DNA from: Octopus sinensis
Taxonomy: Eukaryota
Direction of reading: 5' to 3'
NCBI RefSeq assembly: GCF_006345805.1
Contig: NC_043002.1
Location: forward strand, 38,688,001 to 38,752,000
Length of the DNA stretch: 64,000 bases
The notes under the pieces were generated by a model that was given only the letters and a program-made list of their open reading frames with translations, was not told where the DNA came from and did no database searches. Position numbers and translations under genes: made by a program. Positions 1,979 through 57,670 of the stretch are shown piece after piece (within the stretch, counting starts at the first letter, position 1; each line of letters opens with the position of its first letter).

Positions 1979-3735
1979 ATGATGTTGATCATGATGATGA
2001 TGGTTGGGGTGGGGTGATGATAATAATTATATATTCTTAAAAAAGACAAGACATGAAATGAAGCAGAGAGTGTTTAAGCGATTACATCAACTCCGGCATT
2101 TTATTGACTCTGGTGTTTTGTACCAGAACTATCTTTATTAGTACTTCATCATATTGACTTTGGTTGCATAAAATGTAAGACTGAACTCGACAAGATTTGG
2201 ACATAGAATGTGAAGAGCTAGACTAAAACGGCAAGTGATGCACCGCGCCCCACTGATTCTGCCGCTCAATATAATCATCGGAAATGGGTAAAAAAAATGA
2301 CTTGAAGAATCGATCCTGTTAATAAAGATGACCAACAATAGTGGAAGTATTTAATCAATAATTTTAAAATATCCTCTTTCTTACAGAGGCTAGTTTATGC
2401 AGGAAGACTAAAATATAATTTGTCAAGCTAATGACTGAAGAAAGTATTTACATGGAAAATAAAATAACATAACATGGCGATCGACATTTCCCTTCTACTT
2501 TTCTTGTAGTTAAGTCGAAACAAACAAGTATATATTGCTAAAAATAGACTGTACACCAGTTGACTGGAAGACTGCTTCAGAACATTGTAAATATAATGAA
2601 TATACGGCTAAATTGTTTTTAATTTATATAATAATTAGTAACGGTTTTTAACTGTGACATGAGGCCACAAACCCAGTGGGAAAATAATATTGATTCAAAG
2701 GACGCCATAAACTTGATTGTTAAAAATGACTGAAATTACTTTCATTTTTATTTTTATTTACACAGGCAAGAAAATTGTGGTTGCCTGGAGGTGAATGTAT
2801 ATCAAACAGAGGTACTTAATGTAATATTAACTCGAATTTAAAACACATTCAGAGTGAAATATCTCAGAATATAGAAGAGAAAAGGAATGTATACATACAA
2901 TACATATATTAAAACATTACGCTTGTTTAAATTTTGTGTGGCTTTAAAACTCAACCTATTTTCAAAACACTAAGTTTGAAAGAGAATACATAGCTAGTTT
3001 GTTTGACATTTTGTGTATCTTAAGAAGATCGTCTATATTTAAAACAGTAAGTTGAAAATTGTGTCTATATTAAACCAGTGCCTACGTTAAAGTACGTGAA
3101 TATCGTATTTAAAATATCGATGTTTAAAATAGAGTGTAGCTTTAATATATTGTGTAGATTTAAATCTGCATTTTAATATCTGTGATATGGTATGTTATTT
3201 TCGTCGATAATCGTGCATGTAGTGTCAAAAATTGGGGTTGTTTTCTCTAGCAACAAACTGTGTTCTTAGCAAATTCATTATATTTCCGTCGATTCGGTAG
3301 TCTGTTTTTGCGTCCTGTTCGCACACTGCGATGATGAGATGCTAACTTCTGTCTTCTTTTTAACTATGTTTTTTTTTTCATTTTTTTTAAATATGTATTT
3401 GTGATCTGATAGGTCTGGCATAATCCATGAAGGACCTAACTATTGTTTTACATTATTGTTGCTTCCTTCTGTTGCTAGTTAAGAAAATTATTGAGTAAAC
3501 CTAAAAGTCTCTCAAAACAACAAACGAGAGGTCTTTTCGGTCTGCTAAGATAATGCGACCAGTGGAAATAATGAAAATTCACCACACAAAAACGATCAAG
3601 AAAAAATTACAAGGATTTCTTAAAACGTGTCCTTCTCAAATTGATATGCGCCATCAAACGGTTAGATTAGTGACGTCCCACAGGCTTCAGTAACGGAAGC
3701 AGAAGAAACAAAGTTTTAATATTATTGGAGTCCAA

Positions 3736-3950
3736 GGCTATGAGCTGGCAGAATCGTTAGCACACTGGGAAAAATGCTTAGCAGTATTTTGTCCGTCTTT
3801 ACGTTCTGAGTTCAAATTCCGTTGAGGTAGACTTTGCCTTTCATCCTTCCGGAGTCGACAAAATAGGTACAAGTTTCGCAGTGGGGTCGATGTAATTGAA
3901 TTAACCCTTTCTTCGAAATATCTGGCCTTGTACCAAAATTTGAGACCAGT
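3736..3950 (+). mobile_element. SINE family B (other fragments at ~1782-1900 -, 17160-17330 +, 51080-51560 -, 59040-59400 +)
   Basis: GAGCTGGCAGAATCGTTAGC..GTTCAAATTCC..CTTTGCCTTTCATCCTTCCGGAGTCGAC. Confidence 0.8.
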
Positions 3951-6900
3951 ATATTGCTAGAGCGTCGCCACCTTTGTATTTGTGCGACCTACTGCAGTTA
4001 GTGACGTTTTTAATTTCTGACAAATAATTTCTAGAGGGAAATAAATCAATTCCTAAACAAGAACATTTAGTCATCTCCAGTGTCACGATGTGATTAATTA
4101 GGAACATTTCATTAACGGGTTTTCTTGATAAATAATTTTCATACGTTCATTGCTCTTGTACTTAACAATGATTCGGCAGTATTTGATTCGTCGGTTTTAA
4201 TTTGGTTTATTCTTTTGTTCTTTGTTTTGTGAGTGTTTTATTCTTCTTCGTGTGTTCGCGTTATTTTGCTCTCATCACTGTTTAGTTGATACTGGTAGAA
4301 TTGCTGTTGATTGGTGGTTGCTTCTATTATCTTGTGATAGAAGATTGGCAAACATTGTTCAGAAATGCCTAATGTGGTTTTAAAAATAGTAGAACCATCA
4401 GCAGCAGCAGTTAATTTCATTTTCTAGCTCCAGACCGATCATACGAAGTATTGTCAGTGATGTATATTTTTAAAAGATTTTTCACATATTGCAGAGTGGT
4501 CACAGAAATATCTATTAATAGAAACTGTCCTTTTTTCTTTTCTTTTCTATCACTAACAACTAACCACAGAGATACATAAAGAAAATCTTGGAACATTCTT
4601 GCTTAAAACAAACATTATTTAGATTTTCTGCTATCACGTAAACTTAATGCTAACATTTCCACTTGATATATTCCAGATAACTTTAATTATATTGATTTTA
4701 TATGCATTACACTCTGGTATAAGTCGCTCGTTGTTAGATTTTTATGGCAGAATATCGATGCAAGATTGCCGTCGTCAGAAATATCTAACATTAACATTTG
4801 CCAACTTGCTAAAATGGCGGTGCTTGTGACTCGTGACAGGGCTTCAAATTGAAGACGTTAGGACCGAATTGAAGCATCGGCGAGGAAATGTGTTTGCTCT
4901 TTCAATAGATTCTCCCAAAGGGATGTGATCACTCAGACCAAGGAAAATATGTTCCATGATAGAAGCATCGCTACATTTCCTTATATATAATTCTGTAACA
5001 TCTACCTTCTGTAATTTGTAATAATGTGTATTCTTTATATATATTTTATCCTAGGAATTGATTTCTAAAGTGTATGAGAAATAACTGAAGCTAAATAGAA
5101 TTACACATACTGTCTAATGGCCCGTTGAATTAAAGAGAAGTTCTAATATATTAATGTTCCTTGGTGCACTGAAAAATTGGGCAATGATTTAGGTTTCTGC
5201 GGAAGGCAATTTTAGATTGCGTTCGTCAGGAGATAAAATTATGTCTTAAATTATAAATTACTAATACATTGGTAGTGATGCTGCGAAACTTAAGAATAAA
5301 GTGGGTTGAAAGGTGTAATGGCTGTGTAGCAACAGAACATTTATAATACATATATATATATATATGTGTGTGTGTATATGTTTATGCAAGTGGATGGAGG
5401 TTTACGCATACCAAAAGATATACGTGTATGAAAATAAATCAGTTTAGTGCACCTAGATGTCTACCTTGATATATTTGTTCTATAACATTGTCCTTATTTA
5501 CATATGCATATCATTAATTCTGGTTTCTTCTTGTGGCATTTTAAATTCGGAGATTTAGGAGTTTGCAATCTGTTAATATGAGTTTAACTTTCGTTTGAAA
5601 GTTAATATATGTATATTAATTTTCCTAGGTGATGCAGTTGCGTATTTGAAACTCACAATTTAGTTCACTTGCCTCTCAAACTATTTAAGAATAAGTAAAG
5701 TAGTTATCGAGATCAAGATGATATATACTAATCACTAGTGATTCTATGATCTTATCTCATAAACACATGAATCGTTAAAAACTAATAGATGTATCTCATA
5801 TTTCAACAGAAACAAGTGAGAAATAAAACATTTGTGCAGCCATACACTATAATAAATTTCACATATATGAGGTGTATGTCTGTGCCTGGGTACGTATGAG
5901 TTTCTGGGTTTACATGTACCTGCATATATCTACATCTATATGTGCGTATGCGTTTGTGTGTATGCGTACGATCGTAGGTAGGGAAGTATTAAGAAAGAAA
6001 GACTTGGTGAAAATTTTCTTTCCCACTTCTTCATATGTATAGGCGGTCGAAATGATTAGCGTTCCCATTCAGTTGCAGCCAGTCGTTCAAACATAGAAGT
6101 TTTACAACTCTGCACTTTTCCTCTTTGTTCACACTGATATTTTAAAACCTGAAGTTTTAAAAGTTGGGCACTGAAACTACACAACTTTGCTTTTCACTTT
6201 CTGTCACCTTTGCAGTTAATATTGTCACTGACCAACACTAGTTTCCTTGAACTTACTTTATCTGTCTATATATCTGTCTGTTTATCTGTCTATCTATCTA
6301 TATGTATATCTCTCTATCTATTTATCTATCTGTATATACACACACACACGCACGCACACACACACACGCACACACAGAGTTAGTGGTCTAAGGTGAACTT
6401 AAACGTATATATTCATTCATCTTTTATTATATCCTTTCTTGCACTTTTTTATGTATTCTCTCTTTCCACTCTGTATCTCTCTTATGCTTGTTATCCCAGA
6501 CTCTTTTTTCCTTAATTTCTCTCTTTTTCATCAGTTCTCTTTAGTGATCTCTAACTTAACTCTTTGAAAAACATAACGCATGTATTATTTTTTGCTTCTT
6601 TTATTTGAAAATAGACGAATATGAAATATATATATATTTACATATATATATATATATACATATACGTATATACATATATATATATATCCGGTTGCGGTAC
6701 TTGCTCGGTTTTCCATGATTTTTTGTCGCCACATAACTTTATTTATAATTGAATTGGGAGCTTTAGTTCTGAGTATTTCATTAGCTGATTACGCAACCAT
6801 GAACGCCGCTCCTTCATATGTGTTGCAGTTATACTCCGTAATAAAGCTTTGTGATCCTGACTTTTGGTGTAGGATTTCTTTGTCCAGCATCATTATGTGA

Positions 6901-7428
6901 AGCACCGTCGGCCCAATTACCCTGGGCTCTTAACCTGCCTTTCACAATCCGCCCAGCTGCAGTCGGATGACTTCGCAGAGTGGCTGACCAGGGACTATGC
7001 CTTGCCAAAGGGCAGGCGTAACTATGCAGGGTAGAGCCGTCACTCCGTAAGGTACTTTTAAAGTACCCGCATTCCCTATCAACGTATTATGCTTGTTTCA
7101 GTAGAGTGACTTTTAGGACCAATCTTAAAAGGATGGCAAGCTACCAACGGTAGAACAGGCCTGAAGCAACCAATAATTATGGGAAGTGTTTCAAAAGAAG
7201 TAAAATTAATATCGCTTATGAGAAACTGGACTAATAACCATAAAACACCGTTAGACAAAATAAGATTTTAAAAGAATTACGATAACACATTTATCGGGTG
7301 GTACATGAAGTAAATTCAACAAGACAGATATCGGAAGAACAAACACACACACACGTACACACACACACACACAAGCACGCATGTATGTATAAACATACCA
7401 GCATATATATTTATATATATATGAACAT

Positions 7429-7459
<31 letters not shown>

Positions 7460-7470
7460 TATAGATAGAT

Positions 7471-7564
<94 letters not shown>

Positions 7565-7817
7565 AATATGCAAACGCAAACATATTTCTTCCAGCAAAAT
7601 GTACTCTAAACATAACCAAAATGTAGCAACTGATTTATTAGTTTTCCGGCACCAAACTTCATAGTTATTCTAATGTCTAAAATAACAAATTTCATTCCTT
7701 TACACAAAGAAAAAGATAAGAAATAAAGAAGCAAAAATCAAAGCAGAAAATAATTTTGTTAACTCCTACTTTGGCACCAGAACAATGACATTTTTCCTTT
7801 ATTCTAAATGTTGTGAT

Positions 7818-8531
7818 ACGAACGTATCTCTTCCCCCTTGATTCTTTCGAAGCATTTCTCTTGGCATTACTGCAATAAAAAGTGTGATTTATTTAAAAAG
7901 CGAACGAATTACTTCCCGTTCGGTAAGGTACTCGTTTAGAACCGAGCAACATATTTCTTGGGGTTCCGCTGAGTTTTAGTCTAGGCTACTTTTCCAAGAT
8001 TATAAAGGTTTGACTCTATTCCATCTATTTTTATTGTTGCTGCTGCTGTTGTTGTTGTTGTTGTTGTTATTGTTGCTATTTTTGTTGTTGTTGTTTTCAT
8101 CTTATTTGATATACAGAAAGTGTGTCTAAAGCCAGATGGAGACGTCGATCTCCTGGGGCTAAATAGCTACAGTAACGAACGTATCTCTTCCCCCTTGATT
8201 CTTTCGAAGCATTTCTCTTGGCATTACTGCAATAAAAAGTGTGATTTATTTAAAAAGCGAACGAATTACTTCCCGTTCGGTAAGGTACTCGTTTAGAACC
8301 GAGCAACATATTTCTTGGGGTTCCGCTGAGTTTTAGTCTAGGCTACTTTTCCAAGATTATAAAGGTTTGACTCTATTCCATCTATTTTTATTGTTGCTGC
8401 GGCTGTTGTTGTTGTTGTTGTTGTTATTGTTGCTATTTTTGTTGTTGTTGTTTTCATCTTATTTGATATACAGAAAGTGTGTCTAAAGCCAGATGGAGAC
8501 GTCGATCTCCTGGGGCTAAATAGCTACAGTA
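7818..8531. repeat. Near-perfect 357-bp tandem duplication
   Basis: ACGAACGTATCTC...GCTACAGTA at 7818-8174 and 8175-8531; about one substitution seen. Confidence 0.95.
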
Positions 8532-9208
8532 ACACCCCCTCTTTGTGGTTGGCCATGTTGAGATGGCTTTTATACTTTACGTTGTTGATCGGCTACTGTT
8601 TACATCTCGCTCTGTGATTTAATAATGCTTACAGTCAGTTTTTCGAAATCAGTGGCAGACGTCACTAGAAAAACTCTTATATATTTGCAAAGCAAACCTT
8701 GCCTTTCATCGTGACCTGGTGGTTACCGCCCGTTGATAAGAGACAATAATCTCGAAACCGCGGTCCGGTGCGTATCACTAAGGCTTACGAGGAAGGGATG
8801 GCTTCCCTTTGCAAATACCTGAAGGGCACATAAGGTGTGTCTAAAGCAAGCTGGAGACGTCTATCTCCTGGGGCTAAATAGCTACAGTAACACCCCCCAC
8901 TTTGTGGCTGGCCATGTTGATTCAGTGACAGTTTTCTTACAACCATCTCAAAACAATGAGAGAGTCAAGCAGCACCGTGAGAGTTCTTCTTTGAGCATGA
9001 TAAACTAGCAAGAAACAGCAACCAGATCTCCCTCAAATCACTTTCTACTCTCTTTAAAAGAAGGATTCATTTATGCGTGCGGGGACGCGTGGAGCTTTAG
9101 GTGTTTTCGCTCAATAAACACTCACAACGCCCAGTCTTGGAATCGAAACCGCGATCCTACGACCGTGAGTCCGCTGCCCAAACCACTGGGCCGTTGCGCC
9201 TCCACATA

Positions 9209-18286: not shown

Positions 18287-18334
18287 GTCTCTGATGAAGG
18301 GATATCACTAATATCCCAGAAACAGCTGTAAGAC
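18287..18334 (+). ncRNA. Canonical-core type I hammerhead motif (solo, PLE-terminus-like context)
   Basis: GTCT-CTGATGA-A.GGGATAT(CACTA)ATATCCC.A-GAAA-CAGCTG-TA-AGAC; stem III is the palindrome ACAGCTGT; GUA triplet. Confidence 0.8.
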
Positions 18335-40781: not shown

Positions 40782-41090
40782 CAGGGTGCAGTGAACATAT
40801 TGCCGTCTAAATTACGCTAAAATGAAAATAACACTGAAATCTCATTTTAACAGATATATTTACCAAAATTACAAAACAATATCTTGAAATAATAAATTAG
40901 ATAGTAAATTTGTTCAATAAAATCGCTATTGGCTTCAACCACGGCCTCCAGACAACTTCGGAATCTCCTGCAACTCTTCTGGATGATCTCTTTGTTTAAG
41001 CTGGTGAACACTGCCATAATCCTTTTCTTCAGTTCGTCTTTGGTGTTACAAAGAGTTTTGTTGGTCTCTCGCGCAACTGCGTCTCATACA
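40782..41090 (-). mobile_element. 3' end and TIR of a maT-like Tc1/mariner element
   Basis: Minus strand VARETNKTLCNTKDELKKRIMAVF...CRRFRSCLEAVVEANSDFIE*; terminal CAGGGTG. Confidence 0.75.
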
Positions 41091-41117
41091 TAATAATGTA
41101 TACACACACACACACAC

Positions 41118-41155
<38 letters not shown>

Positions 41156-41171
41156 GCAATGAGGGTCTTGT

Positions 41172-41197
<26 letters not shown>

Positions 41198-41205
<8 letters not shown>

Positions 41206-44200
41206 ATATAGAGGGCATTATACATACATGCCAGGAGGCATTCTACATACACGCCATACGCTAAGAGGGACAATCAGTCATTTCTACCAAAAATATTACT
41301 AATCCCACCGAATGCAATTTTTCAAAGAAAGACATTTAAAAATATATAGACCTGTATCACAGTGATTTCATACTTACGTAATCATCAGCAGGCCTGAATA
41401 TACTATAAATAAACAACGACCCTGCTTCGCTTAAGCCGATCAGCTAACTGATCAACATCAACGAAGCACATGGGTGGGTTTATATATACTATATCCGGAT
41501 GAATGGCAAACTTTTACGAATTGCATTTCGGGAGAGGAAAAGTTTTTTCGGAATAAAAATTTAGCAATTAAGGACAACTACTTAATAAGGAAAACTTAAC
41601 AAGAATTGTCAGGTAGATAGCGTAAAAACCTCATAAGAGAAAAAATTTCGAAAATAATTATTTCCTATTGAACATATTAATTTATATATAGAGGGCATTA
41701 TACATACATGCCAGGAGGCATTCTACATACACGCCATACGCTAAGAGGGACAATCAGTCATTTCTACCAAAAATATTACTAATCCCACCGAATGCAATTT
41801 TTCAAAGAAAGACATTTAAAAATATATGACCTGTATCACAGTGATTTCATACTTACGTAATCATCAGCAGGCCTGAATATACTATAAAAAACAACGACCC
41901 TGCTTCGCTTAAGCCGATCAGCTAACTGATCAACATCAACGAAGCACATGGGTGGGTTTATATATACTATATCCGGATGAATGGCAAACTTTTACGAATT
42001 GCATTTCGGGAGAGGAAAAGTTTTTTCGGAATAAAATTTAGCAATTAAGGACAACTACTTATAAGGAAAACTTAACAAGAAATTGTCAGGTAGATAGCGT
42101 AAAAACCTCATAAGAGAAAAATTTCGAAAATAATTATTTCCTGTTGAACATATTAATTTATATATAGAGGGCATTATACATACATGCCAGGAGGCATTCT
42201 ACATACACGCCATACGCTAAGAGGACAATCAGTCATTTCTACCAAAAATATTACTAATCCCACGAATGCAATTTTTCAAAGAAAGACATTTAAAAATATA
42301 TAGACCTGTATCACAGTGATTTCATACTTACGTAATCATCAGCAGGCCTGATATACTATAAATAAAACACGACCCTGCTTCGCTTAAGCCGATCAGCTAA
42401 CTGATCAACATCAACGAAGCACATGGGTGGGTTTATATATACTATATCCGGATGAATGGCAAACTTTTACGAATTGCATTTCGGGAGAGGAAAAGTTTTT
42501 TCGGAATAAAATTTAGCAATTAAGGACAACACTTAATAAGGAAAACTTAACAAGAAATTGTCAGGTAGATAGCGTAAAAACCTCATAAGAGAAAAAATTT
42601 CGAAAATAATTATTTCCTATTGAACATTTAATTTTATATATAGAGGGCATTATACATACATGCCAGGAGGCATTCTACATACACGCCATACGCTAAGAGG
42701 GACAATCAGTCATTCTATTCTACCAAAAATATTACTAATCCCACCGAATGCAATTTTTCAAAGAAAGACATTTAAAAATATATAGACCTGTATCACAGTG
42801 ATTTCATACTTACGTAATCATCAGCAGGCCTGAATATACTATAAATAAACAACGACCCTGCTTCGCTTAAGCCGATCAGCTAACTGATCAACATCAACGA
42901 AGCACATGGGTGGGTTTATATATACTATATCCGGATGAATGGCAAACTTTTACGAATTGCATTTCGGGAGAGGAAAAGTTTTTTCGGAATAAAAATTTAG
43001 CAATTAAGGACAACTACTTAATAAGGAAAACTTAACAAGAAATTGTCAGGTAGATAGCGTAAAAACCTCATAAGAGAAAAAATTTCGAAAATAATTATTT
43101 CCTATTGAACATATTAATTTATATATAGAGGGCATTATACATACATGCCAGGAGGCATTCTACATACACGCCATACGCTAAGAGGGACAATCAGTCATTT
43201 CTACCAAAAATATTACTAATCCCACCGAATGCAATTTTTCAAAGAAAGACATTTAAAAATATATAGACCTGTATCACAGTGATTTCATACTTACGTATCA
43301 TCAGCAGGCCTGAATATACTATAAATAAACAACGACCCTGCTTCGCTTAAGCCGATCAGCTAACTGATCAACATCAACGAAGCACATGGGTGGGTTATAT
43401 ATACTATATCCGGATGAATGGCAAACTTTCGAATTGCATTTCGGGAGAGGAAAAGTATTTTCGGAAATAAATTTAGCAATTAAGGACAACTACTTAATAA
43501 GGAAAACTTAACAAGAAATGGTGTCAGGTAGATAGCGTAAAAACCTCATAAGAGAAAAAATTTCGAAAATAATTATTTCCTATTGAACATATTAATTTAT
43601 ATATAGAGGGCATTTACATACATGCCAGGAGGCATTCTACATACACGCATACGCTAAGAGGGACAATCAGTCATTTCTACCAAAAATATTACTAATCCAC
43701 CGAATGCAATTTTTCAAAGAAAGACATTTAAAAATATATAGACCTGTATCACAGTGATTTCATACTTACGTAATCATCAGCAGGCCTGAATATACTATAA
43801 ATAAACAACGACCCTGCTTCGCTTAAGCCGATCAGCTAACTGATCAACATCAACGAAGCACATGGGTGGGTTTATATATACTATATCCGGATGAATGGCA
43901 AACTTTTACGAATTGCATTTCGGGAGAGGAAAAGTTTTTTCGGAATAAAAATTTAGCAATTAAGGACAACTACTTAATAAGGAAAACTTAACAAAAGAAT
44001 GTCAGGTAGATAGCGTAAAAACCTCATAAGAGAAAAAATTTCGAAAATAATTATTTCCTATTGAACATATTAATTTATATATAGAGGGCATTATACATAC
44101 ATGCCAGGAGGCATTCTACATACACGCCATACGCTAAGAGGGACAATCAGTCATTTCTACCAAAAATATTACTAATCCCACCGAATGCAATTTTTCAAAG

Positions 44201-44538
44201 AAAGACATTTAAAAATATATAGACCTGTATCACAGTGATTTCATACTTACGTAATCATCAGCAGGCCTGAATATACTATAAATAAACAACGACCCTGCTT
44301 CGCTTAAGCCGATCAGCTAACTGATCAACATCAACGAAGCACATGGGTGGGTTTATATATACTATATCCGGATGAATGGCAAACTTTTACGAATTGCATT
44401 TCGGGAGAGGAAAAGTTTTTTCGGAATAAAAATTTAGCAATTAAGGACAACTACTTAATAAGGAAAACTAACAAGAAATTGTCAGGTAGATAGCGTAAAA
44501 ACCTCATAAGAGAAAAAATTTCGAAAATAATTATTTCC
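41198..44538 (-). repeat. Left arm of ~480-bp tandem array (7 units, last ~13 nt short); hammerhead sense is the minus strand
   Basis: Unit start AATTTATATATAGAGGGC recurs at ~41199, 41679, 42155, 42630, 43116, 43594, 44072; units differ almost only by 1-nt indels; no ORF of 60 aa or more in the track. Confidence 0.97.
41348..41395 (-). ncRNA. Type I hammerhead motif, first of seven minus-strand copies (others ~41828, 42302, 42784, 43265, 43740, 44221)
   Basis: Plus strand AGACCTGTATCACAGTGATTTCATACTTACGTAATCATCAGCAGGCCT is the reverse complement of the 45005 motif; copies 2 and 5 each lack one nucleotide. Confidence 0.8.
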
Positions 44539-45004
44539 ATACGTAAGTATGAAATCACTGTGATACAGGTCTATATATTTTTAAATGTCTTTCTTTGAAA
44601 AATTGCATTCGGTGGGATTAGTAATATTTTTGGTAGAAATGACTGATTGTCCCTCTTAGCGTATGGCGTGTATGTAGAATGCCTCCTGGCATGTATGTAT
44701 AATGCCCTCTATATATAAATTAATATGTTCAATAGGAAATAATTATTTTCGAAATTTTTTCTCTTATGAGGTTTTTATGCTATCTACCTGACAATTTCTT
44801 GTTAAGTTTTCCTTATTAAGTAGTTGTCCTTAATTGCTAAATTTTTATTCCGAAAAAACTTTTCCTCTCCCGAAATGCAATTCGTAAAAGTTTGCCATTC
44901 ATCCGGATATAGTATATATAAACCCACCCATGTGCTTCGTTGATGTTGATCAGTTAGCTGATCGGCTTAAGCGAAGCAGGGTCGTTGTTTATTATAGTAT
45001 ATTC

Positions 45005-45052
45005 AGGCCTGCTGATGATTACGTAAGTATGAAATCACTGTGATACAGGTCT
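45005..45052 (+). ncRNA. Type I hammerhead ribozyme motif of the array unit (predicted cleavage 45045/45046)
   Basis: AGGCCTG-CTGATGA-T.TAC(GTAA)GTA.T-GAAA-TCACTGTGA-TA-CAGGTCT: 7-bp stem I (one G.U), intact core, GNRA-capped stem II, near-palindromic stem III, AUA triplet. U.U at the base of stem II is atypical. Confidence 0.8.
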
Positions 45053-45483
45053 ATATATTTTTAAATGTCTTTCTTTGAAAAATTGCATTCGGTGGGATTA
45101 GTATATTTTTGGTACAAATGACTGATTGTCCCTCTTAGCGTATGGCGTGTATGTAGAATGCCTCCTGGCATGTATGTATAATGCCCTCTATATATAAATT
45201 AATATGTTCAATAGGAAATAATTATTTTCGAAATTTTTTCTCTATGAGGTTTTTACGCTATCTACCTGACAATTTCTTGTTAAGTTTTCCTTATTAAGTA
45301 GTTGTCCTTAATTGCTAAATTTTTATTCCGAAAAAACTTTTCCTCTCCCGAAATGCAATTCGTAAAAGTTTGCCATTCATCCGGATATAGTATATATAAA
45401 CCCACCCATGTGCTTCGTTGATGTTGATCAGTTAGCTGATCGGCTTAAGCGAAGCAGGGTCGTTGTTTATTTATAGTATATTC

Positions 45484-45531
45484 AGGCCTGCTGATGATTA
45501 CGTAAGTATGAAATCACTGTGATACAGGTCT
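45484..45531 (+). ncRNA. Type I hammerhead motif, second complete plus-strand copy
   Basis: Identical to 45005-45052. Confidence 0.8.
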
Positions 45532-45868
45532 ATATATTTTAAATGTCTTTCTTTGAAAAATTGCATTCGGTGGGATTAGTAATATTTTTGGTAGAAATGA
45601 CTGATTGTCCCTCTTAGCGTATGGCGTGTATGTAGAATGCCTCCTGGCATGTATGTATAATGCCCTCTATATATATTAATATGTTCAATAGGAAATAATT
45701 ATTTTCGAAATTTTTTCTCTTATGAGGTTTTTACGCTATCTACCTGACAATTTCTTGTTAAGTTTTCCTTATTAAGTAGTTGTCCTTATTGCTAAATTTA
45801 TATATAATATATATAATATATATATCTATATATATATATATATATATATTTATAGCAATGAGGGTCAT

Positions 45869-45904
<36 letters not shown>

Positions 45905-46054
45905 CAATGAGGGTCATTGTTATAATTATATATAATTTTACCGAATATGGTCCTTTTCAATACCGAAGAACTACTTGGTGAAATTTGTTGATTTTATTAA
46001 ATTAACTATATTTCACCCTTTATCTGTATTGTATGTATATATATATATATTATA

Positions 46055-46544: not shown

Positions 46545-46755
46545 AGAAGTAGAAGAAGAAGAAGAAGAAGAAGGAGAAGGAGAAGGAGAAGGAGAAGATG
46601 ACGATGATGGTGATGGTGGTGATGATTATGACGACGATGATGATGATAATGATAATGATGAAGAAGAAGAAGAAGAAGAAGGAGGAGAAGGAGAAGATGG
46701 TGGTGATGATGGTGGTGATGATGATGACGACGATGATGATGATAATGATGATGAT

Positions 46756-46790
<35 letters not shown>

Positions 46791-46803
46791 AGAAGAAGAA
46801 GAA
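46545..46803. repeat. Compound (GAA)n/(GAT)n/(GGT)n trinucleotide repeat
   Basis: Direct reading; source of the poly-E/D and poly-M/K ORFs. Confidence 0.95.
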
Positions 46804-47026
46804 AAAACAGAGAAGGGAGAATATGAATGGGTGTAAATATAGCTATGAAGGGGCTGATTAGTAATGGATTCTATGGAGTGTAATATTTGTGTGTGTATAT
46901 ATATTTTTCTTTTATTCTAAAGTTGAGGTATATTAATTGTTTGTCGTAGACCCGTTAAGAAGTGGCTTGTATTTTGTAATAAAGAGATTTTCTTTACTTA
47001 TTCGTTGTCTCGAGGTTGTATCGTCC

Positions 47027-48686
47027 CTAAATTGGTAGAGGGGGAAAATTCTGAAGTTTGGTGTTTTTTTTGTTGGCGCAAGTATCTATGTGTTGGCTAA
47101 AAGCTATTTTTCTGTTTTGGGGAATTTTTATCTGGGATCTGTGCAGGGCCATTCGTTTACGCAAACCATTTTTTGTTTGGCCTATGTACTGCTCTTGACA
47201 CCCGGAGCAGGTTAGTGAGTATATTAGGTTCTCCGAAGCACATGTGAAGTTGCTTTTCACTGTAAACCGTTGTCCCTGTTTGAAGGAGAACTCTGATCCC
47301 TCAATAAGATAGTCGCATATCCCGCAATTGGGTCTTCCACATTTTTTACTGTCGGCTTCTGTGTTGAAGAGTGAATTCGGGCTTGTGTAAGGAGACTTTT
47401 CATGGATCTAGGCTGTCTTTTGCTTTTTATGATCGTGTGTGTTTGGAGGATTTTTTTCATTCTGTGGTCTTTTTTTAGGAGGGGTATGTTGTGGAGGATG
47501 GTGTCGAAGGCTTCGTTATTGAGAGGGTTGTGTGTGGAGATGTATGGTAAGGCTTTTGGTTGTAAGTTTTTCTTGATTTGGGATGTCTCAGTTCCTTGAT
47601 GTTAAGTTGAAGGGCACGTTGAATGCACTTGTCAATAAGTGAAGGTGGATAGTTCCTGGTGATTAGGGTATCTTTTAGTTCTTGTAGTCGTGTGTCTCTG
47701 GTGTTTGCGTTAGAGACTATAGTGCATATCCTTTTTGCTAGATTGAAGGGGATATTCATCCTGGTGTGTCTGGGGTGGCATGAATTGAATGGAAGATATT
47801 GCTTAGAGTCTGTAGGCTTATAGTATATGTCTGTTTCTATTATATTATTAGCTTTCTTAATGAGGATATCGAGGAAGGGGAGTTGTTGTTGGCTATATTC
47901 CATCGTGAATTGGATGTTTACGTCCAGTCCGTTTAAAATTTTCTGGAATTCTATGAGTTTTTCTATATTTTTATGCCAAAGGATGAAACAGTCATCTAGA
48001 TATCTCTTCCAGTTGTTTTCTATGTAGATGGAGAAAGGGCTGCCATATCTTTCTAGAACCTTACGATACAGACTGATCTCTAGGTATCCTATGACTAGGT
48101 TGGCAAAGGAGGGGGCCATTCGTGTACCCATCGCAGTCCCCGATTTTTGTCGGTAGAAGTTGTCATTGAAGGCGAAGAAGTTATTTTCCAGGATGAATTT
48201 AACCCCTTCTATCACAAATTCTTTTTTGATGCGGTGTGGTAGTTCGTTGGCGTGATTCTCTAGCCAGAATTGGATTGCCTCTAGTCCTAGGTTGTGTTGG
48301 GATATTGGAGTAGAGGTTGACTACATCGAAGGATACCAGTATGGTGTTTTTGTTTATAGTATTCGGTAGGTGATTGAGCATATCTAAGTCGTCCCTTATA
48401 TAGCTTTTGACATGTTTGAGGAGTGGTTTTAACAGGGTGTCTAAAAAGTTACTGAGGCGGTGGGTTTCGCATGCGGGACCTGCTATTATGGGTCTCAATT
48501 TGAGGTCATTAGGATTAGGGACTTTAATTATTTTGTCTGTAGCTATCTTGCATGCGTTGCTTATTTTTTCACTTTTGTGGATCTTAGGTATACCGTAGAA
48601 TTGGCTAGTTTTACTTGTGAAATTGGTCATATAATCATATTCTTTGTCGGTGAGCCCTGCTTTGTATGGGTTTAATATGGATTTTA
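47027..48686 (-). pseudogene. PLE reverse transcriptase + GIY-YIG endonuclease ORF, 5'-truncated, three small frameshifts (~48290, ~47560, ~47345)
   Basis: ORFs 48199-48765, 47475-48215, 47257-47460 and 47027-47260 join into one PLE polyprotein by small frame changes; I saw no in-frame stops in the joined path. Confidence 0.9.
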
Positions 48687-49059
48687 TACATATATACATA
48701 CATACGTACATACATAGGATCAGCGGTGGTGCCCCAGCACGACCACAGCTTTGAAGCTGAAACAATTTAAAGAAATAAAGCTATATATGTACATACATAC
48801 GTACATACATACATACATACATACATACATACATACATACATACATACATACATACATACATACATACACATGCATTCATGCATACAATTCTTTCACAAG
48901 TCATTGGTTGGCCCGGGAGTATAGTGTAGACACTTGCCGCATATGCTATATATTGGAGCTGAATCTAAAAGCCTATGATTTAGGAACGAACTAATTATCG
49001 AGACAGGGTTGTTATCCACACATACATACTTATGTATGTATGTATGTATGCATGCATGT

Positions 49060-55614: not shown

Positions 55615-57670
55615 TTATTTCATAAATTTGTCATATAGACAGTACAAAGAGCTTTGCGGGCTGGACAAACACATTAATGAATGAAAATGAAATATAATGA
55701 ATAAATGAGAGACGGAACCCAACACTCGCCGATTGGATTTTTCTCGAAAACATATTTTCTTTTTTTTTTTTAAATCAATATGAGGTTTCAAACCTCTTAC
55801 ACGAAGGAGGCACTAAAACCTCTTACTTAACATGTTTTCTTCTTTTTTCTTTCTTTCTTAAAACACAAAATTGAGGTTATAATCCACTACAAAATAATCC
55901 AATAAGACGAGTTTTCAAACCCTGTAACGAGGGTCTTTCACCTCCTACTCTTCGATATATCCATCGATATATTCATCATTATCTTCAATGCCGCTTGAGT
56001 TCCTGTATCCCGCCATTTCCCATGCCTCACTCATGTAGGACATGTAAGTCGTGTAAGGGCCAGCCGGCCATATGCGACATTCCTCCCCAAATCCTTTAAG
56101 CCTTTCCCACAAGGGAAACCTTATGACCTCCACAGCTATCTGCGGAGGCCATTCGGGATCCCGTGTGAAGAGCATATCTACTGTTTCTTTATGTTCTTCT
56201 ACTATTTTTCCACCTCCCTGCCCTTGTAGAAAAAGATAATTAATTGATCATCTTTAAGGGTGGGGTGGTTTCTTCCACCGTGGGTGGCACAACTTCGGGA
56301 CATGCAGTCGGCACATCATCTCCCCGCTGAGATGACCCGTTCTTCTTCCTTCTTTTTTCTTTTCTTCCTGGCTTCGGGAGAGTGGAGCTCTTCCGCTTTG
56401 TCCGGAGACTCTCCCCCGCCTCCCGAAGCCTTAGGTTCCTTCGGCGGGCAACTATTGTTGCCCGCCTTCTTTTTAATCCTTTTTGAGTTGAGGAGGCTGA
56501 AGCCTCCTCGACCACATCCACCTTTCCCTTTGACCGGGTAAGTGAGGTGGCATCTAGTGACTGTTCCAAGACCTTACCATGGCCCTGGGGGCAGTTCCTT
56601 TTAATTTGGCCTGGCTGCAGGCACAAGTGACACTTTGGGGGACGTCCCTCAAGTATCACCGGATACCTGCAGCCAGCCATTTTCAAGAAATCTGGAAAAA
56701 CCAGTTCTGTTGCGGCCGATGGGGTCCACAGAGTCAAAATCGCTTTTGACCCTTCCCAATCGACCGCCGGCAATACCCTTACATTTAAGAGCCTGGGCCC
56801 GCCATCCCCCAGTCCCCGTCGGATGGTATCTTCAATCCAATCCGCTTCGGTGCCCAGGGGCAGCCCACATACCCAGGCTCGTATTAATTTTCTTCCACAT
56901 TATGACGGGAGAAACAGAATTTCCTTGCCTTCTAAAGGCTGACTCGCAAACTGGCGAGCCTTTCCCCCGTTGTCAAACAGCAACCATACGGTTGCATGTT
57001 TGACACCACGGGATATACATTTTACAGAGGACAAATGTTCTTTAAGTTCATTTTTTATGACTTGTTTTGGGAAGACGGTGATGGAATTAAGAACTTTAAG
57101 TACCATCGTCTTCTCCTCCATATCTTTTAACCACTGCTTAGGCGGGTTAATTTCCCACTCTAAGACAGAGCTTTTCTTTTTAAGTTCCTTCTCTGCCATG
57201 TCAAAAAACAGTTCAAAAGTAGTTCAAAAGACAGTCTGCCAAAAAATTAAATCGATTAAAAATAAAACAAAATAAAAGAGGAGGGGAGGAAACTGAAATT
57301 AAAGTAATGAAAAGAATGAACCAAAATTTAGAAAGAAAGAAAAAATAGAAGAAGGGAAAAGTAAAAGAAAAACCTCACAAATAGCACAGACAGGGAATCC
57401 TTTGTATAATACTCCAAAAAGGTAATCCAAAAGGGCAATCCAAATGGCTTATTCTTATTTTTCTGGCGAGATACGCCCACTAGAATTCACAAGAAGAATT
57501 CTCAAGTAAAAATTCTCAATTCACCGTTACGGTGATGAGAACCCAGTATTTTGCTCGCTATAGCGAGCCATAATTGACAATTTTTCTTTTTGTTCTTTTT
57601 TTCTGTTCACAGAGCCGAAACTCACATCTGCTCACTGTAACAGTCCAGACCAACTAGTGTTGCATTCTGG
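55615..57670 (-). mobile_element. ORF1-only LINE derivative (HAL1-like / Tx1-L1-type ORF1) inserted in a SINE head
   Basis: ~470-bp 5' UTR, ORF1 remnant with zinc knuckle, ~330-bp 3' UTR ending AATAA(A); flanked by a 14-bp duplication (55601-55614 / 57671-57684, 13/14 match); no APE or RT motifs seen. Confidence 0.7.
55945..57199 (-). pseudogene. Gag-like ORF1 remnant with CX2CX4(H>Q)X4C knuckle
   Basis: ORFs 56900-57199, 56240-56773 and 55945-56175 join through one premature stop and frameshifts; VILEGRPPKCHLCLQPGQIKRNC followed by a basic region. Confidence 0.7.

What the first reader, a model, noticed from the sequence alone, without database searches (positions are those of the whole stretch)
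41198..45799. 4.6-kb tandem array of ~480-bp units, each with a type I hammerhead ribozyme: a retrozyme-like element in a probable octopus genome
Seen: nine complete copies and one partial copy of AGGCCUG-CUGAUGA-UUAC(GUAA)GUAU-GAAA-UCACUGUGA-UA-CAGGUCU, one per unit, in a non-coding, almost homogeneous array. Stem I has 7 bp and extends past a UC bulge (UAUAU/AUAUA). Stem II is a GUAA-capped hairpin. Stem III (AUCAC-U-GUGAU) is near-palindromic. Established: tandem repeats with type I hammerheads and short palindromic stem III (newt satellite 2, schistosome Sm-alpha, animal non-LTR retrozymes, PLE termini) self-cleave, often as dimers, releasing monomers that can circularise. Inference: transcription would give ~480-nt monomers or circRNA copied back by a borrowed RT. 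I do not know of a described cephalopod example, and the unit is longer than the ~170-400 nt I recall for animal retrozymes. Weak point: U.U rather than G-C at the base of stem II.
Basis: partly seen in the sequence, partly recalled or inferred. Interest (0 to 1): 0.93.

Follow-up and report, generated by a model that had tools for sequence, protein, structure and literature searches.

The report
Hammerhead-ribozyme retrozyme repeat in octopus DNA
A 4.6-kb block of almost identical 481-base non-coding repeats, each with a self-cutting "hammerhead" RNA motif, is most likely a small parasitic retroelement (a retrozyme) copied into an octopus-type genome by a Penelope-like element's enzymes; this kind of element is already known in other animals, so it is a good but fairly ordinary example.

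Summary
The repeat and the hammerhead (HHR) motif are real. There are nine complete copies and one partial copy, at the stated coordinates, and far more than chance would give. The locus is not one tandem array. It is two inverted blocks joined head-to-head: 7.0 units with the HHR on the minus strand (41193-44538) and 2.6 units with it on the plus strand (44540-45803). Both blocks are 5'-truncated at the centre. Their 3' ends point outward into (TA)n, and near-identical ~80-nt direct repeats bracket the whole. This is the insertion signature of Penelope-like elements (PLEs). I found the same anatomy, and an HHR with the same U.U mismatch, in an autonomous PLE of Argonauta hians.

The 481-nt unit is non-coding and 33.5% GC. 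Its sense RNA folds far better than shuffles (z = -6.6), with stem I closing the fold. Two copies fold into a double hammerhead.

Best reading: a metazoan non-LTR retrozyme, meaning a non-autonomous PLE-dependent element.

Caveats:
- Rfam hammerhead models do not score it, even at E<=10.
- No homologous arrays could be fetched, so there is no covariation or copy-number evidence.
- Cleavage and expression are untested.

The unit length and the U.U mismatch both have published precedents, and hammerhead hits are already reported for a squid genome. It is a new member of a known kind, of moderate-to-low interest.

The parts
41193..44538 (-). Block A: 7.0 units of the 481-nt repeat, sense (HHR) strand = minus. 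Read 5'->3' on the minus strand it starts 5'-truncated at consensus position 170 (window 44539/44538), runs through six full units, and ends 3'-truncated at consensus position ~157 (window 41193) in (TA)11.
   Evidence: TRF; unit dissection
44540..45803 (+). Block B: 2.6 units, sense strand = plus. It starts 5'-truncated inside the HHR at consensus position ~456 (this is the 'partial copy'), has two full units, and ends 3'-truncated at consensus position ~279 (window ~45799) in TA-rich sequence.
   Evidence: TRF (consensus is the reverse complement of block A)
44538..44540 (.). Head-to-head junction of the two 5'-truncated blocks, with one filler or ambiguous base. The two sides are at different unit phases (170 vs 456), so it is not a mirror-image fold-back.
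   Evidence: inverted arms of up to 455 nt at 100% complementarity
45005..45052 (+). Complete type I hammerhead motif; predicted cut after A45045
45484..45531 (+). Complete type I hammerhead motif; predicted cut after A45524
44540..44572 (+). Partial hammerhead. It lacks the stem I 5' strand and CUGAUGAU, so it is not expected to cut in cis. The cleavage-site sequence GUGAUA|C is still present at 44565/44566.
44221..44268 (-). Complete hammerhead motif; predicted cut between 44228 and 44227 on the minus strand
43740..43787 (-). Complete hammerhead motif; cut between 43747 and 43746
43265..43311 (-). Hammerhead motif with a 1-nt deletion in stem II (CUGAUGA-UACGUAAGUAU-GAAA); cut site between 43272 and 43271
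42784..42831 (-). Complete hammerhead motif; cut between 42791 and 42790
42302..42349 (-). Complete hammerhead motif (1-nt deletion in the distal extension of stem I); cut between 42309 and 42308
41828..41873 (-). Hammerhead motif with a 1-nt deletion in the stem I 3' strand (6 bp); cut between 41834 and 41833
41348..41395 (-). Complete hammerhead motif; cut between 41355 and 41354
41118..41192 (+). Left flank: (TA)n-TTTATAGCAATGAGGGTCTTGTTA-(TA)11. It is a direct repeat of the right flank and a candidate long target-site duplication. The target is a (TA)n microsatellite.
45804..45899 (+). Right flank: TA-rich run-TTTATAGCAATGAGGGTCATTGTT-TTA(TA)n. It is nearly identical to the left flank over ~80 nt. 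A third, more divergent copy follows at 45900-45925 (49-bp period).

Best explanation
The locus is one young insertion of a metazoan non-LTR retrozyme, a non-coding, non-autonomous retroelement that depends on Penelope-like element (PLE) enzymes.

Proposed cycle:
1. Sense transcription of a multimer (inferred; the promoter is unknown).
2. Each unit's type I hammerhead cuts after A17 (GUGAUA|CAGGUC). It acts alone or, more efficiently, as a double hammerhead formed by two neighbouring copies through the near-palindromic stem III. This releases 481-nt monomers with 5'-OH and 2',3'-cyclic phosphate ends (inferred from HHR chemistry).
3. The monomer folds into a highly paired structure in which stem I brings the two ends together. 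A host RtcB-type tRNA ligase then circularises it (inferred from mussel and axolotl retrozymes).
4. A PLE reverse transcriptase/GIY-YIG nickase nicks a (TA)n microsatellite and copies the circular or multimeric RNA by target-primed, more-than-unit-length reverse transcription.
5. Priming from both nicked strands gives two 5'-truncated multimers joined head-to-head, with 3' ends outward and a variable, long target-site duplication.

Shown here: the sequence anatomy, the motif, the RNA folding propensity, the PLE-type insertion architecture, and the presence of PLEs in the genome. Not shown: transcription, cleavage, circularisation, and which RT did the copying.
For: Repeat and motif:
- One complete HHR core and three stems per unit, in nine copies. 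Chance expectation is 0.0067 per window at this stringency, and 27 of 20000 shuffled units give any relaxed hit.
- The motif is type I: stems II and III are closed by short loops, and stem I is closed by the other 433 nt.
- The unit is 481 nt and 33.5% GC, with no ORF over 56 aa. This fits the published retrozyme profile of tandem units of a few hundred bp, low GC, and no LTR/PBS/PPT (PMC7229834).

RNA folding:
- Sense monomer MFE is -128.7 kcal/mol against shuffles at -94.8 +/- 5.2, giving z = -6.57 with 0 of 100 shuffles as stable. As a circle it is -125.2, z = -6.2.
- Stem I closes the global fold.
- Two HHR copies cofold into a double hammerhead at -29.9, against 2 x -11.1 for monomers.

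Insertion anatomy:
- Two inverted blocks lie head-to-head, each 5'-truncated at a different unit phase. Their 3' ends face outward at two further phases, in (TA)n.
- The flanks are near-identical over ~80 nt, and the flank motif occurs nowhere else in the window.
- PLE insertions are described exactly this way: 5'-truncation, head-to-tail tandems, an adjacent inverted 5'-truncated copy, microsatellite/(TA)n target bias and variable-length TSDs. Multicopy head-to-tail insertions are also reported for non-autonomous PLEs (PMC8557442).

PLE context:
- A decayed RT + GIY-YIG PLE lies 1.1 kb to the right.
- An autonomous Argonauta hians PLE (L004) shows the same head-to-head anatomy and (TA)n ends, and an HHR with the same U.U at the base of stem II.

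Precedent for U.U: axolotl HHR_Amex2 carries it and is active, best as a dimer (PMC7229834).

Age: units in both blocks are essentially identical, which fits one recent event.
Against: - No Rfam hammerhead model scores the motif, even at E<=10 on a 91-nt slice.
- The G10.1-C11.1 pair, described as highly conserved in canonical and PLE HHRs (PMC4209133), is replaced by U.U. Stem II has only 3 Watson-Crick pairs.
- 15.2-16.2 is U-A and the cleavage triplet is AUA, not GUC.
- The canonical HHR fold (-9.9) is not the MFE of the 71-nt segment (-13.8).
- The antisense strand is also strongly structured (z = -5.4), so the folding signal is not strand-specific.
- No second locus, homologous array or transcript could be retrieved. 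There is therefore no covariation, copy-number or expression evidence.
- The unit shows no similarity to the neighbouring PLE or to the three fetched octopod PLE loci tested.
- The flanking repeat could be a pre-existing 49-bp minisatellite rather than a TSD.
Confidence: 0.75

Rival explanations
1. Dead retrozyme-derived satellite. The repeat descends from a retrozyme or PLE terminus, but its hammerhead is catalytically inert because of U.U at 10.1/11.1, a 3-bp stem II and an AUA triplet. The array would then persist and grow only by DNA-level processes.
For: Rfam hammerhead models give no score. G10.1-C11.1 is reported as highly conserved (PMC4209133). PLE min-HHRs show low or no activity in vitro. 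The canonical fold is 3.9 kcal/mol above the MFE.
Against: - All 13 core positions are intact in all nine copies.
- The U.U variant is active in axolotl and recurs in an Argonauta PLE.
- Units are near-identical, so the event is young.
- An inverted block with different phases at all four ends cannot arise by unequal crossing-over.
Confidence: 0.13
2. The array is part of a complex insertion of an autonomous PLE: amplified pseudo-LTR/terminal sequence of the neighbouring or another PLE, rather than a separate non-autonomous family.
For: PLE pLTRs carry HHRs and form tandem/inverted structures. A PLE remnant lies 1.1 kb away with its 3' end pointing towards the array. The 2026 preprint derives retrozymes from pLTRs.
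Against: - No RT/EN coding sequence lies within or between the units.
- The unit has no similarity to the neighbouring PLE or its 3' region.
- The PLE is frameshifted and old, while the array is near-identical and young.
- Seven and 2.6 full-unit repeats of a 481-nt non-coding unit are not a pLTR arrangement.
Confidence: 0.07
3. An ordinary satellite or minisatellite whose unit matches the hammerhead pattern by chance. The inverted arrangement is an assembly error.
For: No Rfam hit. The window is extremely rich in simple repeats. The private 1-nt indels suggest a noisy long-read assembly.
Against: - The chance of the motif in a unit is about 1e-3 at the relaxed level and far lower at the observed stem lengths.
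- The RNA fold has z = -6.6.
- The junction is not a mirror fold-back, because the phases differ (170 vs 456).
- The same anatomy is seen in a real PLE.
Confidence: 0.05

Closest known systems
Metazoan non-LTR retrozymes (Cervera & de la Pena 2020, PMC7229834), especially axolotl Rtz_353 with HHR_Amex2 and the Mytilus ~350-390-bp repeats
   Same: - Tandem non-coding units of a few hundred bp with low GC.
- One type I HHR per unit.
- Highly self-paired monomer RNA.
- Co-occurrence with PLEs.
- HHR_Amex2 shares the U.U mismatch at the base of helix II and a relatively stable helix III. It works best as a dimer.
   Different: - No sequence similarity was tested or expected, because these families are species-specific.
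- The host is an octopod.
- The unit is 481 nt, above the 170-400 nt of that paper but inside the 51-972 bp of the 2026 preprint.
- Loop 2 is a GUAA tetraloop and loop 1 is a 2-nt UC bulge.
- Expression, cleavage and circularisation are shown for those elements and not here.
- The head-to-head inverted architecture is not part of their description.
Penelope-like elements and their pLTR hammerheads (Cervera & de la Pena 2014, PMC4209133; Craig et al. 2021, PMC8557442); example here: Argonauta hians PLE in L004
   Same: - Insertion anatomy: 5'-truncation, head-to-tail tandems, an adjacent inverted 5'-truncated copy, (TA)n target and a variable long TSD.
- Type I HHR with a palindromic stem III suited to dimer action.
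- The A. hians HHR has the same U.U at the base of stem II.
   Different: - The array has no RT/EN ORF.
- The array HHR has a long stem I (7+5 bp), a short stem II (3 bp) and a 4-bp stem III. PLE min-HHRs have a short stem I (3-5 bp), a long stem II (5-8 bp) and a 0-2-bp stem III.
- The unit has no sequence similarity to the PLEs examined.
Newt satellite 2 and Schistosoma Sm-alpha hammerhead repeats
   Same: Tandem ~330-bp repeats with a type I HHR and a weak or palindromic stem III. Cleavage as double hammerheads releases monomers (own knowledge; summarised in PMC7229834).
   Different: Those have G10.1-C11.1 and the conserved loop1-loop2 contacts, and they are recognised by Rfam Hammerhead_1. 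This motif is not.
Plant LTR retrozymes (Cervera et al. 2016, PMC4918200)
   Same: A non-autonomous retroelement bounded by HHRs, with a circular RNA intermediate and a borrowed RT.
   Different: Plant elements have type III HHRs inside LTRs, a PBS and PPT, 4-bp TSDs, GC above 55%, and are mobilised by Gypsy LTR elements. None of these features is present here.

Membership tests
Hammerhead ribozyme (type I) | Conserved core: C3-U4-G5-A6-N7-G8-A9, G12-A13-A14, A15.1-U16.1, H17 (not G) | tested here: met
   CUGAUGA...GAAA...U-A is present in all nine complete copies
Hammerhead ribozyme (type I) | Three helices around the core, with helix I open (type I) and helices II and III closed by loops | tested here: met
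   Stem I is 7 bp (+5 bp past a UC bulge). Stem II is 3 bp + GUAA. Stem III is 4 bp + CUG, or 10 bp intermolecular. The named structure evaluates to -9.9 kcal/mol and the dimer cofold to -29.9
Hammerhead ribozyme (type I) | G10.1-C11.1 pair at the base of helix II (highly conserved) | tested here: not met
   U.U is found instead. Precedents: axolotl HHR_Amex2, which is active, and the A. hians PLE HHR
Hammerhead ribozyme (type I) | Match to the Rfam hammerhead covariance models (clan CL00010) at gathering score | tested here: not met
   No hammerhead hit at gathering score, nor at E<=10 on 5 kb or 91 nt. The independent HHR-like motif at 18287 was also missed
Hammerhead ribozyme (type I) | Loop 1 - loop 2 tertiary contacts | not testable with these tools
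   A UC bulge sits 7 bp from the core and loop 2 is a GUAA tetraloop. Mussel retrozyme HHRs also lack the archetypal contact nucleotides yet still cleave
Hammerhead ribozyme (type I) | Covariation of the stems among homologues; self-cleavage | not testable with these tools
   All copies are near-identical and no homologous arrays could be retrieved. Cleavage needs the bench
Metazoan non-LTR retrozyme | Tandem repeats of ~150-1000 bp, each with one type I HHR | tested here: met
   481-nt unit; 7.0 + 2.6 units; one HHR per unit
Metazoan non-LTR retrozyme | Non-coding, low GC (<45-50%), no LTR/PBS/PPT | tested here: met
   GC is 33.5% and the longest ORF is 56 aa. No terminal repeats other than the unit itself
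Metazoan non-LTR retrozyme | Highly self-paired monomer RNA | tested here: met
   z = -6.57, with 0 of 100 shuffles as stable; 64% of bases are paired as a circle. The antisense strand is also structured
Metazoan non-LTR retrozyme | Co-occurrence with autonomous PLEs in the genome | tested here: met
   A decayed RT + GIY-YIG PLE lies at 46935-48765 on the minus strand. It is a remnant, not a proven active partner
Metazoan non-LTR retrozyme | Many dispersed arrays or monomers with different flanks in the same genome | not testable with these tools
   There is no other copy in the window and no tool searches cephalopod genomes by DNA. The indirect protein-index route found nothing
Metazoan non-LTR retrozyme | Expression as unit-length linear and circular RNA | not testable with these tools
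   No transcriptome access
PLE-mediated insertion | 5'-truncated head-to-tail copies with an adjacent inverted 5'-truncated copy, a microsatellite target and a variable TSD | tested here: met
   compared with the description in PMC8557442 and with L004. TSD versus pre-existing minisatellite is unresolved

The most novel reading that the evidence does not exclude
The locus is a single-event footprint of how retrozymes integrate. Two multimeric cDNAs were copied by rolling-circle, target-primed reverse transcription from a circular 481-nt RNA, primed from both nicked strands of a (TA)n target by a PLE enzyme. They were then joined head-to-head and left a long (~80-nt) target duplication. If dispersed copies confirm this, it would be direct structural evidence that PLE machinery mobilises animal retrozymes. 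So far that link rests on co-occurrence and pLTR similarity. A side consequence: read-through transcription across the inverted blocks would give a ~1.26-kb hairpin RNA able to feed small-RNA silencing of the family.
Probability: 0.35. Interest if true: 0.55.

Novelty: new member of a known kind. Interest (0 to 1): 0.35.

Why it matters
It would extend the retrozyme/PLE partnership to octopods, where neither of the two papers matching retrozyme + cephalopod, nor any paper listed by the hammerhead + octopus/cephalopod searches I inspected, describes such an element. It also shows that a hammerhead variant with U.U at the base of helix II recurs in independent lineages (axolotl, Argonauta PLE, this array) and is invisible to the Rfam models. 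Standard genome annotation will therefore undercount such ribozymes. The head-to-head, (TA)n-targeted architecture ties a retrozyme insertion to the peculiar PLE integration mechanism more directly than co-occurrence statistics do. None of this overturns current views; it is a well-preserved specimen of a known class.

Tried and rejected
1. Rfam cmscan was run on the whole window at gathering score, on 41000-46000 at E<=10, and on 44985-45075 at E<=10. There were no hammerhead hits, only spurious miRNA/snoRNA matches in the TA repeats. The second HHR-like motif was missed too.
2. My first pattern search used the wrong spacer length and found nothing. This was corrected.
3. blastn of the unit against the rest of the window found only low-complexity matches.
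4. blastn of the unit against octopod PLE loci L001 (O. vulgaris), L004, L006 and L007 (A. hians) and L005 (O. bimaculoides) found no similarity.
5. Pattern scans for the HHR were run in metagenome, prokaryote-genome and viral contig collections. The only two hits are the same bacterial coding sequence (L002, L003) and are chance matches.
6. A pseudo-protein made of all stop-free frames of the unit was searched against 5.8 billion proteins, hoping to reach Logan/ENA contigs of octopus reads. There were no hits.
7. A fold-back assembly artefact was rejected because the two sides of the junction are at different unit phases.
8. Derivation of the array from the neighbouring PLE was rejected for lack of any similarity and because of the age contrast.
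9. Strand-specific RNA structure as an argument for the sense strand is weak, because both strands fold well.

Full report
OBSERVATION

Tandem Repeats Finder reports two adjacent arrays. One spans 41193-44538 (period 476, 7.0 copies, 97% matches). The other spans 44540-45803 (period 478, 2.6 copies, 98% matches), and its consensus is the reverse complement of the first.

A regular-expression scan finds the hammerhead box CUGAUGA-N12-GAAA nine times inside the array:
- Seven on the minus strand: 41366, 41845, 42320, 42802, 43283, 43758, 44239.
- Two on the plus strand: 45012, 45491.

A simple structural descriptor asks for stem I >=4 bp, CUGANGA, stem II, GAA, A15.1...U16.1 and H17. It returns eight of the nine as complete three-stem motifs. 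The ninth (43283) has a 1-nt deletion in stem II. A tenth, partial copy starts inside the motif at 44540.

The repeat finder confirms inverted arms of up to 455 nt at 100% complementarity between them.

CHANCE

On 300 block-shuffles of the window without the array, the relaxed descriptor gives 0.19 loci per 59 kb. At the stringency met by the array motif (stem I >=7 bp, stem II >=3 bp) it gives 0.0067. Only 27 of 20000 shuffled units give any relaxed hit. A hammerhead-shaped motif in the unit of a tandem repeat is therefore not a chance finding.

THE UNIT

Cut-to-cut, the consensus is 481 nt and 33.5% GC. The eight full units differ at 26 indel columns and 18 substitution columns. All but one of these are private to a single unit, and many sit in homopolymer runs. 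This looks like long-read error on essentially identical units. There is no variant that separates the two blocks. The longest ORF is 56 aa.

The sense monomer folds to -128.7 kcal/mol, against -94.8 +/- 5.2 for 100 dinucleotide shuffles (z = -6.57, none as stable). As a circle it folds to -125.2, z = -6.2, with 64% of bases paired. In these folds stem I (CAGGUCU/AGGCCUG) closes the whole structure and brings the two cleavage ends together. The antisense strand is also well structured (-98.1, z = -5.4) but has fewer G.U pairs (8 against 16). The folding signal is real but only weakly strand-specific.

THE RIBOZYME

All invariant core positions are present. Stem I has 7 bp (one G.U) and continues for 5 A-U pairs past a UC bulge. 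Stem II is a U.U mismatch followed by U-A, A-U and C-G, capped by GUAA. Stem III is A-U, U-A, C-G, A-U with a CUG loop. H17 is A, so the triplet is AUA.

The named structure evaluates to -9.9 kcal/mol on a 71-nt segment whose MFE is -13.8. Two copies cofold to -29.9, against 2 x -11.1 for monomers. They form a double hammerhead with a 10-bp intermolecular stem III.

Against the motif:
- Rfam's hammerhead models do not report it at gathering score, at E<=10 on 5 kb, or at E<=10 on 91 nt.
- G10.1-C11.1 is called highly conserved (PMC4209133), and here it is U.U.

For the motif:
[quoted passage not shown] Its retrozyme forms circles in vivo (PMC7229834).
- I found the same U.U in the hammerhead of an Argonauta hians PLE (below).
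- Mussel retrozyme HHRs also lack the archetypal loop contacts and still cleave.

INSERTION ANATOMY

In sense orientation, block A starts at consensus position 170 and ends at about position 157. Block B starts at about position 456 and ends at about position 279.

Both 5' ends meet at the centre (44538-44540, with one ambiguous base). Both 3' ends face outward and run into (TA)n. Four different phases exclude a mirror-image fold-back artefact. They also exclude growth of the inverted part by unequal crossing-over.

The flanks (41118-41197 and 45818-45899) align almost perfectly over ~80 nt, as (TA)n-TTTATAGCAATGAGGGTC(A)TTGTT-(TA)n. A third, more divergent copy lies just to the right (49-bp period). 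The core of this motif occurs nowhere else in the window. The flanks are therefore either a long target-site duplication or units of a pre-existing minisatellite. I cannot decide between these without an empty site.

COMPARISON WITH PLEs

Craig et al. (PMC8557442) describe PLE insertions as highly 5'-truncated and organised in partial tandems. [quoted passage not shown] The window itself holds a frameshifted PLE on the minus strand. Its RT ORFs are at 48765-48199 and 48215-47475. A GIY-YIG ORF lies at 47260-47027 (Pfam PF01541, E = 2e-4, just under cut-off), and the C-terminus is near 46935. Its best named relatives are from Octopus vulgaris (68%), O. bimaculoides (56%), Argonauta hians (57%) and bivalves. 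This supports an octopod origin for the window.

The locus fetched around the A. hians relative (L004) shows a full PLE at about 4300-8608, with an inverted 5'-truncated copy at 2084-4296 (arms 94-100% complementary). Both 3' ends are outward at (TA)n, with a 37-nt tail on one side. About 100 nt from each 3' end lies the motif CUGAUGA-U-ACAAA-ACAA-UUUGU-U-GAAA-CUAG-U-U. This is again a hammerhead with U.U at the base of stem II. The array therefore has the same architecture as a bona fide octopod PLE insertion, but no coding capacity.

WHAT IT IS

The features match the published definition of metazoan non-LTR retrozymes: tandem units of a few hundred bp, a type I HHR, low GC, non-coding, a highly self-paired RNA, and coexistence with PLEs (PMC7229834). 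[quoted passage not shown] That work reports consensus lengths of 51-972 bp and finds that 75% of families have at most seven units (bioRxiv 10.64898/2026.07.22.740005). More-than-unit reverse transcription of a circular RNA as the source of tandem copies was proposed in PMC4209133.

I assign 0.75 to this explanation. The rivals are:
- An inert relic (0.13).
- Part of an autonomous PLE's complex insertion (0.07).
- A plain satellite with a chance motif and a mis-assembly (0.05).

LIMITS

No tool here searches cephalopod genomes or transcriptomes by nucleotide sequence. The unit has no copy elsewhere in the window or in five fetched octopod loci. Scans of the metagenome, prokaryote and viral collections gave only a chance match in a bacterial gene. 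A search of the protein index with all open frames of the unit gave nothing. Copy number, dispersal, covariation, transcription, cleavage and circularisation therefore remain untested.

NOVELTY

Two papers in the library hold both 'retrozyme' and 'cephalopod'. One was listed (Craig et al., PMC8557442), and it does not describe such an element. None of the papers listed by the hammerhead + octopus/cephalopod searches that I inspected does either. However, the giant squid genome paper already lists 235 Rfam Hammerhead_1 loci (PMC6962438). Retrozyme-like repeats are reported 'from molluscs to arthropods'. The unit length and the U.U mismatch both have precedents. This is a new member of a known kind.

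The most interesting aspect is the clean head-to-head, (TA)n-targeted architecture, which links a retrozyme insertion to the PLE integration mechanism. Interest: 0.35.

Noticed in passing
window 18287-18334 (+): A second, unrelated hammerhead-like motif: GUCU-CUGAUGA-A-GGGAUAU-CACUA-AUAUCCC-A-GAA-ACAGCUGU-A-AGAC. It has a 4-bp stem I, a 7-bp stem II with A.A at its base, and a fully palindromic stem III, which is the PLE 'minimal' dimer type. It is single copy and sits in a ~280-bp unique piece between (TG)n and (CA)n. Chance expectation at this stringency is 0.0067 per window. Rfam does not score it. It is possibly a solo PLE terminus.
   Followed up: partly
window 46935-48765 (-): A decayed canonical Penelope-like element. 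RT lies in two frameshifted ORFs (48765-48199, 48215-47475), a GIY-YIG/CCHH endonuclease ORF at 47260-47027, and the C-terminus near 46935. No hammerhead was found downstream; the 3' end runs into a (GAN)n microsatellite at 46545-46803. Best relatives are Octopus vulgaris (68%) and Argonauta and O. bimaculoides (56-57%).
   Followed up: partly
L004 2084-8608 (Argonauta hians BAAFZT010000013.1): A textbook PLE insertion: a full copy plus an inverted 5'-truncated copy head-to-head, (TA)n at both ends, a 37-nt tail at one end, and an HHR-like motif with U.U at the base of stem II about 100 nt from each 3' end (8487-8513 +, 2179-2205 -). My >=4-bp stem I descriptor missed it because stem I has only 3 bp.
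   Followed up: partly
window 45823-45934 and 41151-41175: A 49-bp-period minisatellite made of (TA)n plus the small palindrome-like motif ACAATGA-GGG-TCATTGT. Its copies bracket the array, and the motif occurs nowhere else in the window.
   Followed up: partly
window 41193-45803: Differences between units are almost all private single-base indels, which is an error profile typical of long-read assemblies. The true units may be identical, and the unit count may not be exact.
   Followed up: no
window ~40905-41085 (-): The translation DAVARETNKTLCNTKDELKKRIMAVFTSLNKEIIQKSCRRFRSCLEAVVEANSDFIEQI looks like the C-terminal end of a mariner-type transposase remnant, just left of the (CA)n/(TA)n target. 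This is recognised from memory only and was not tested.
   Followed up: no
L002 3550-3586 and L003 3021-3057: The only matches to the HHR pattern in the metagenome and prokaryote collections are the same bacterial coding sequence (a chicken-gut MAG and a metagenome contig). They are chance matches, not ribozyme repeats.
   Followed up: yes
window 56240-56773 (-): A 177-aa ORF with a CX2CX4HX4C-like zinc knuckle (CHLCLQPGQIKRNCPQ) and a basic tail. It may be a gag-like retroelement remnant. It has no Pfam hit.
   Followed up: no
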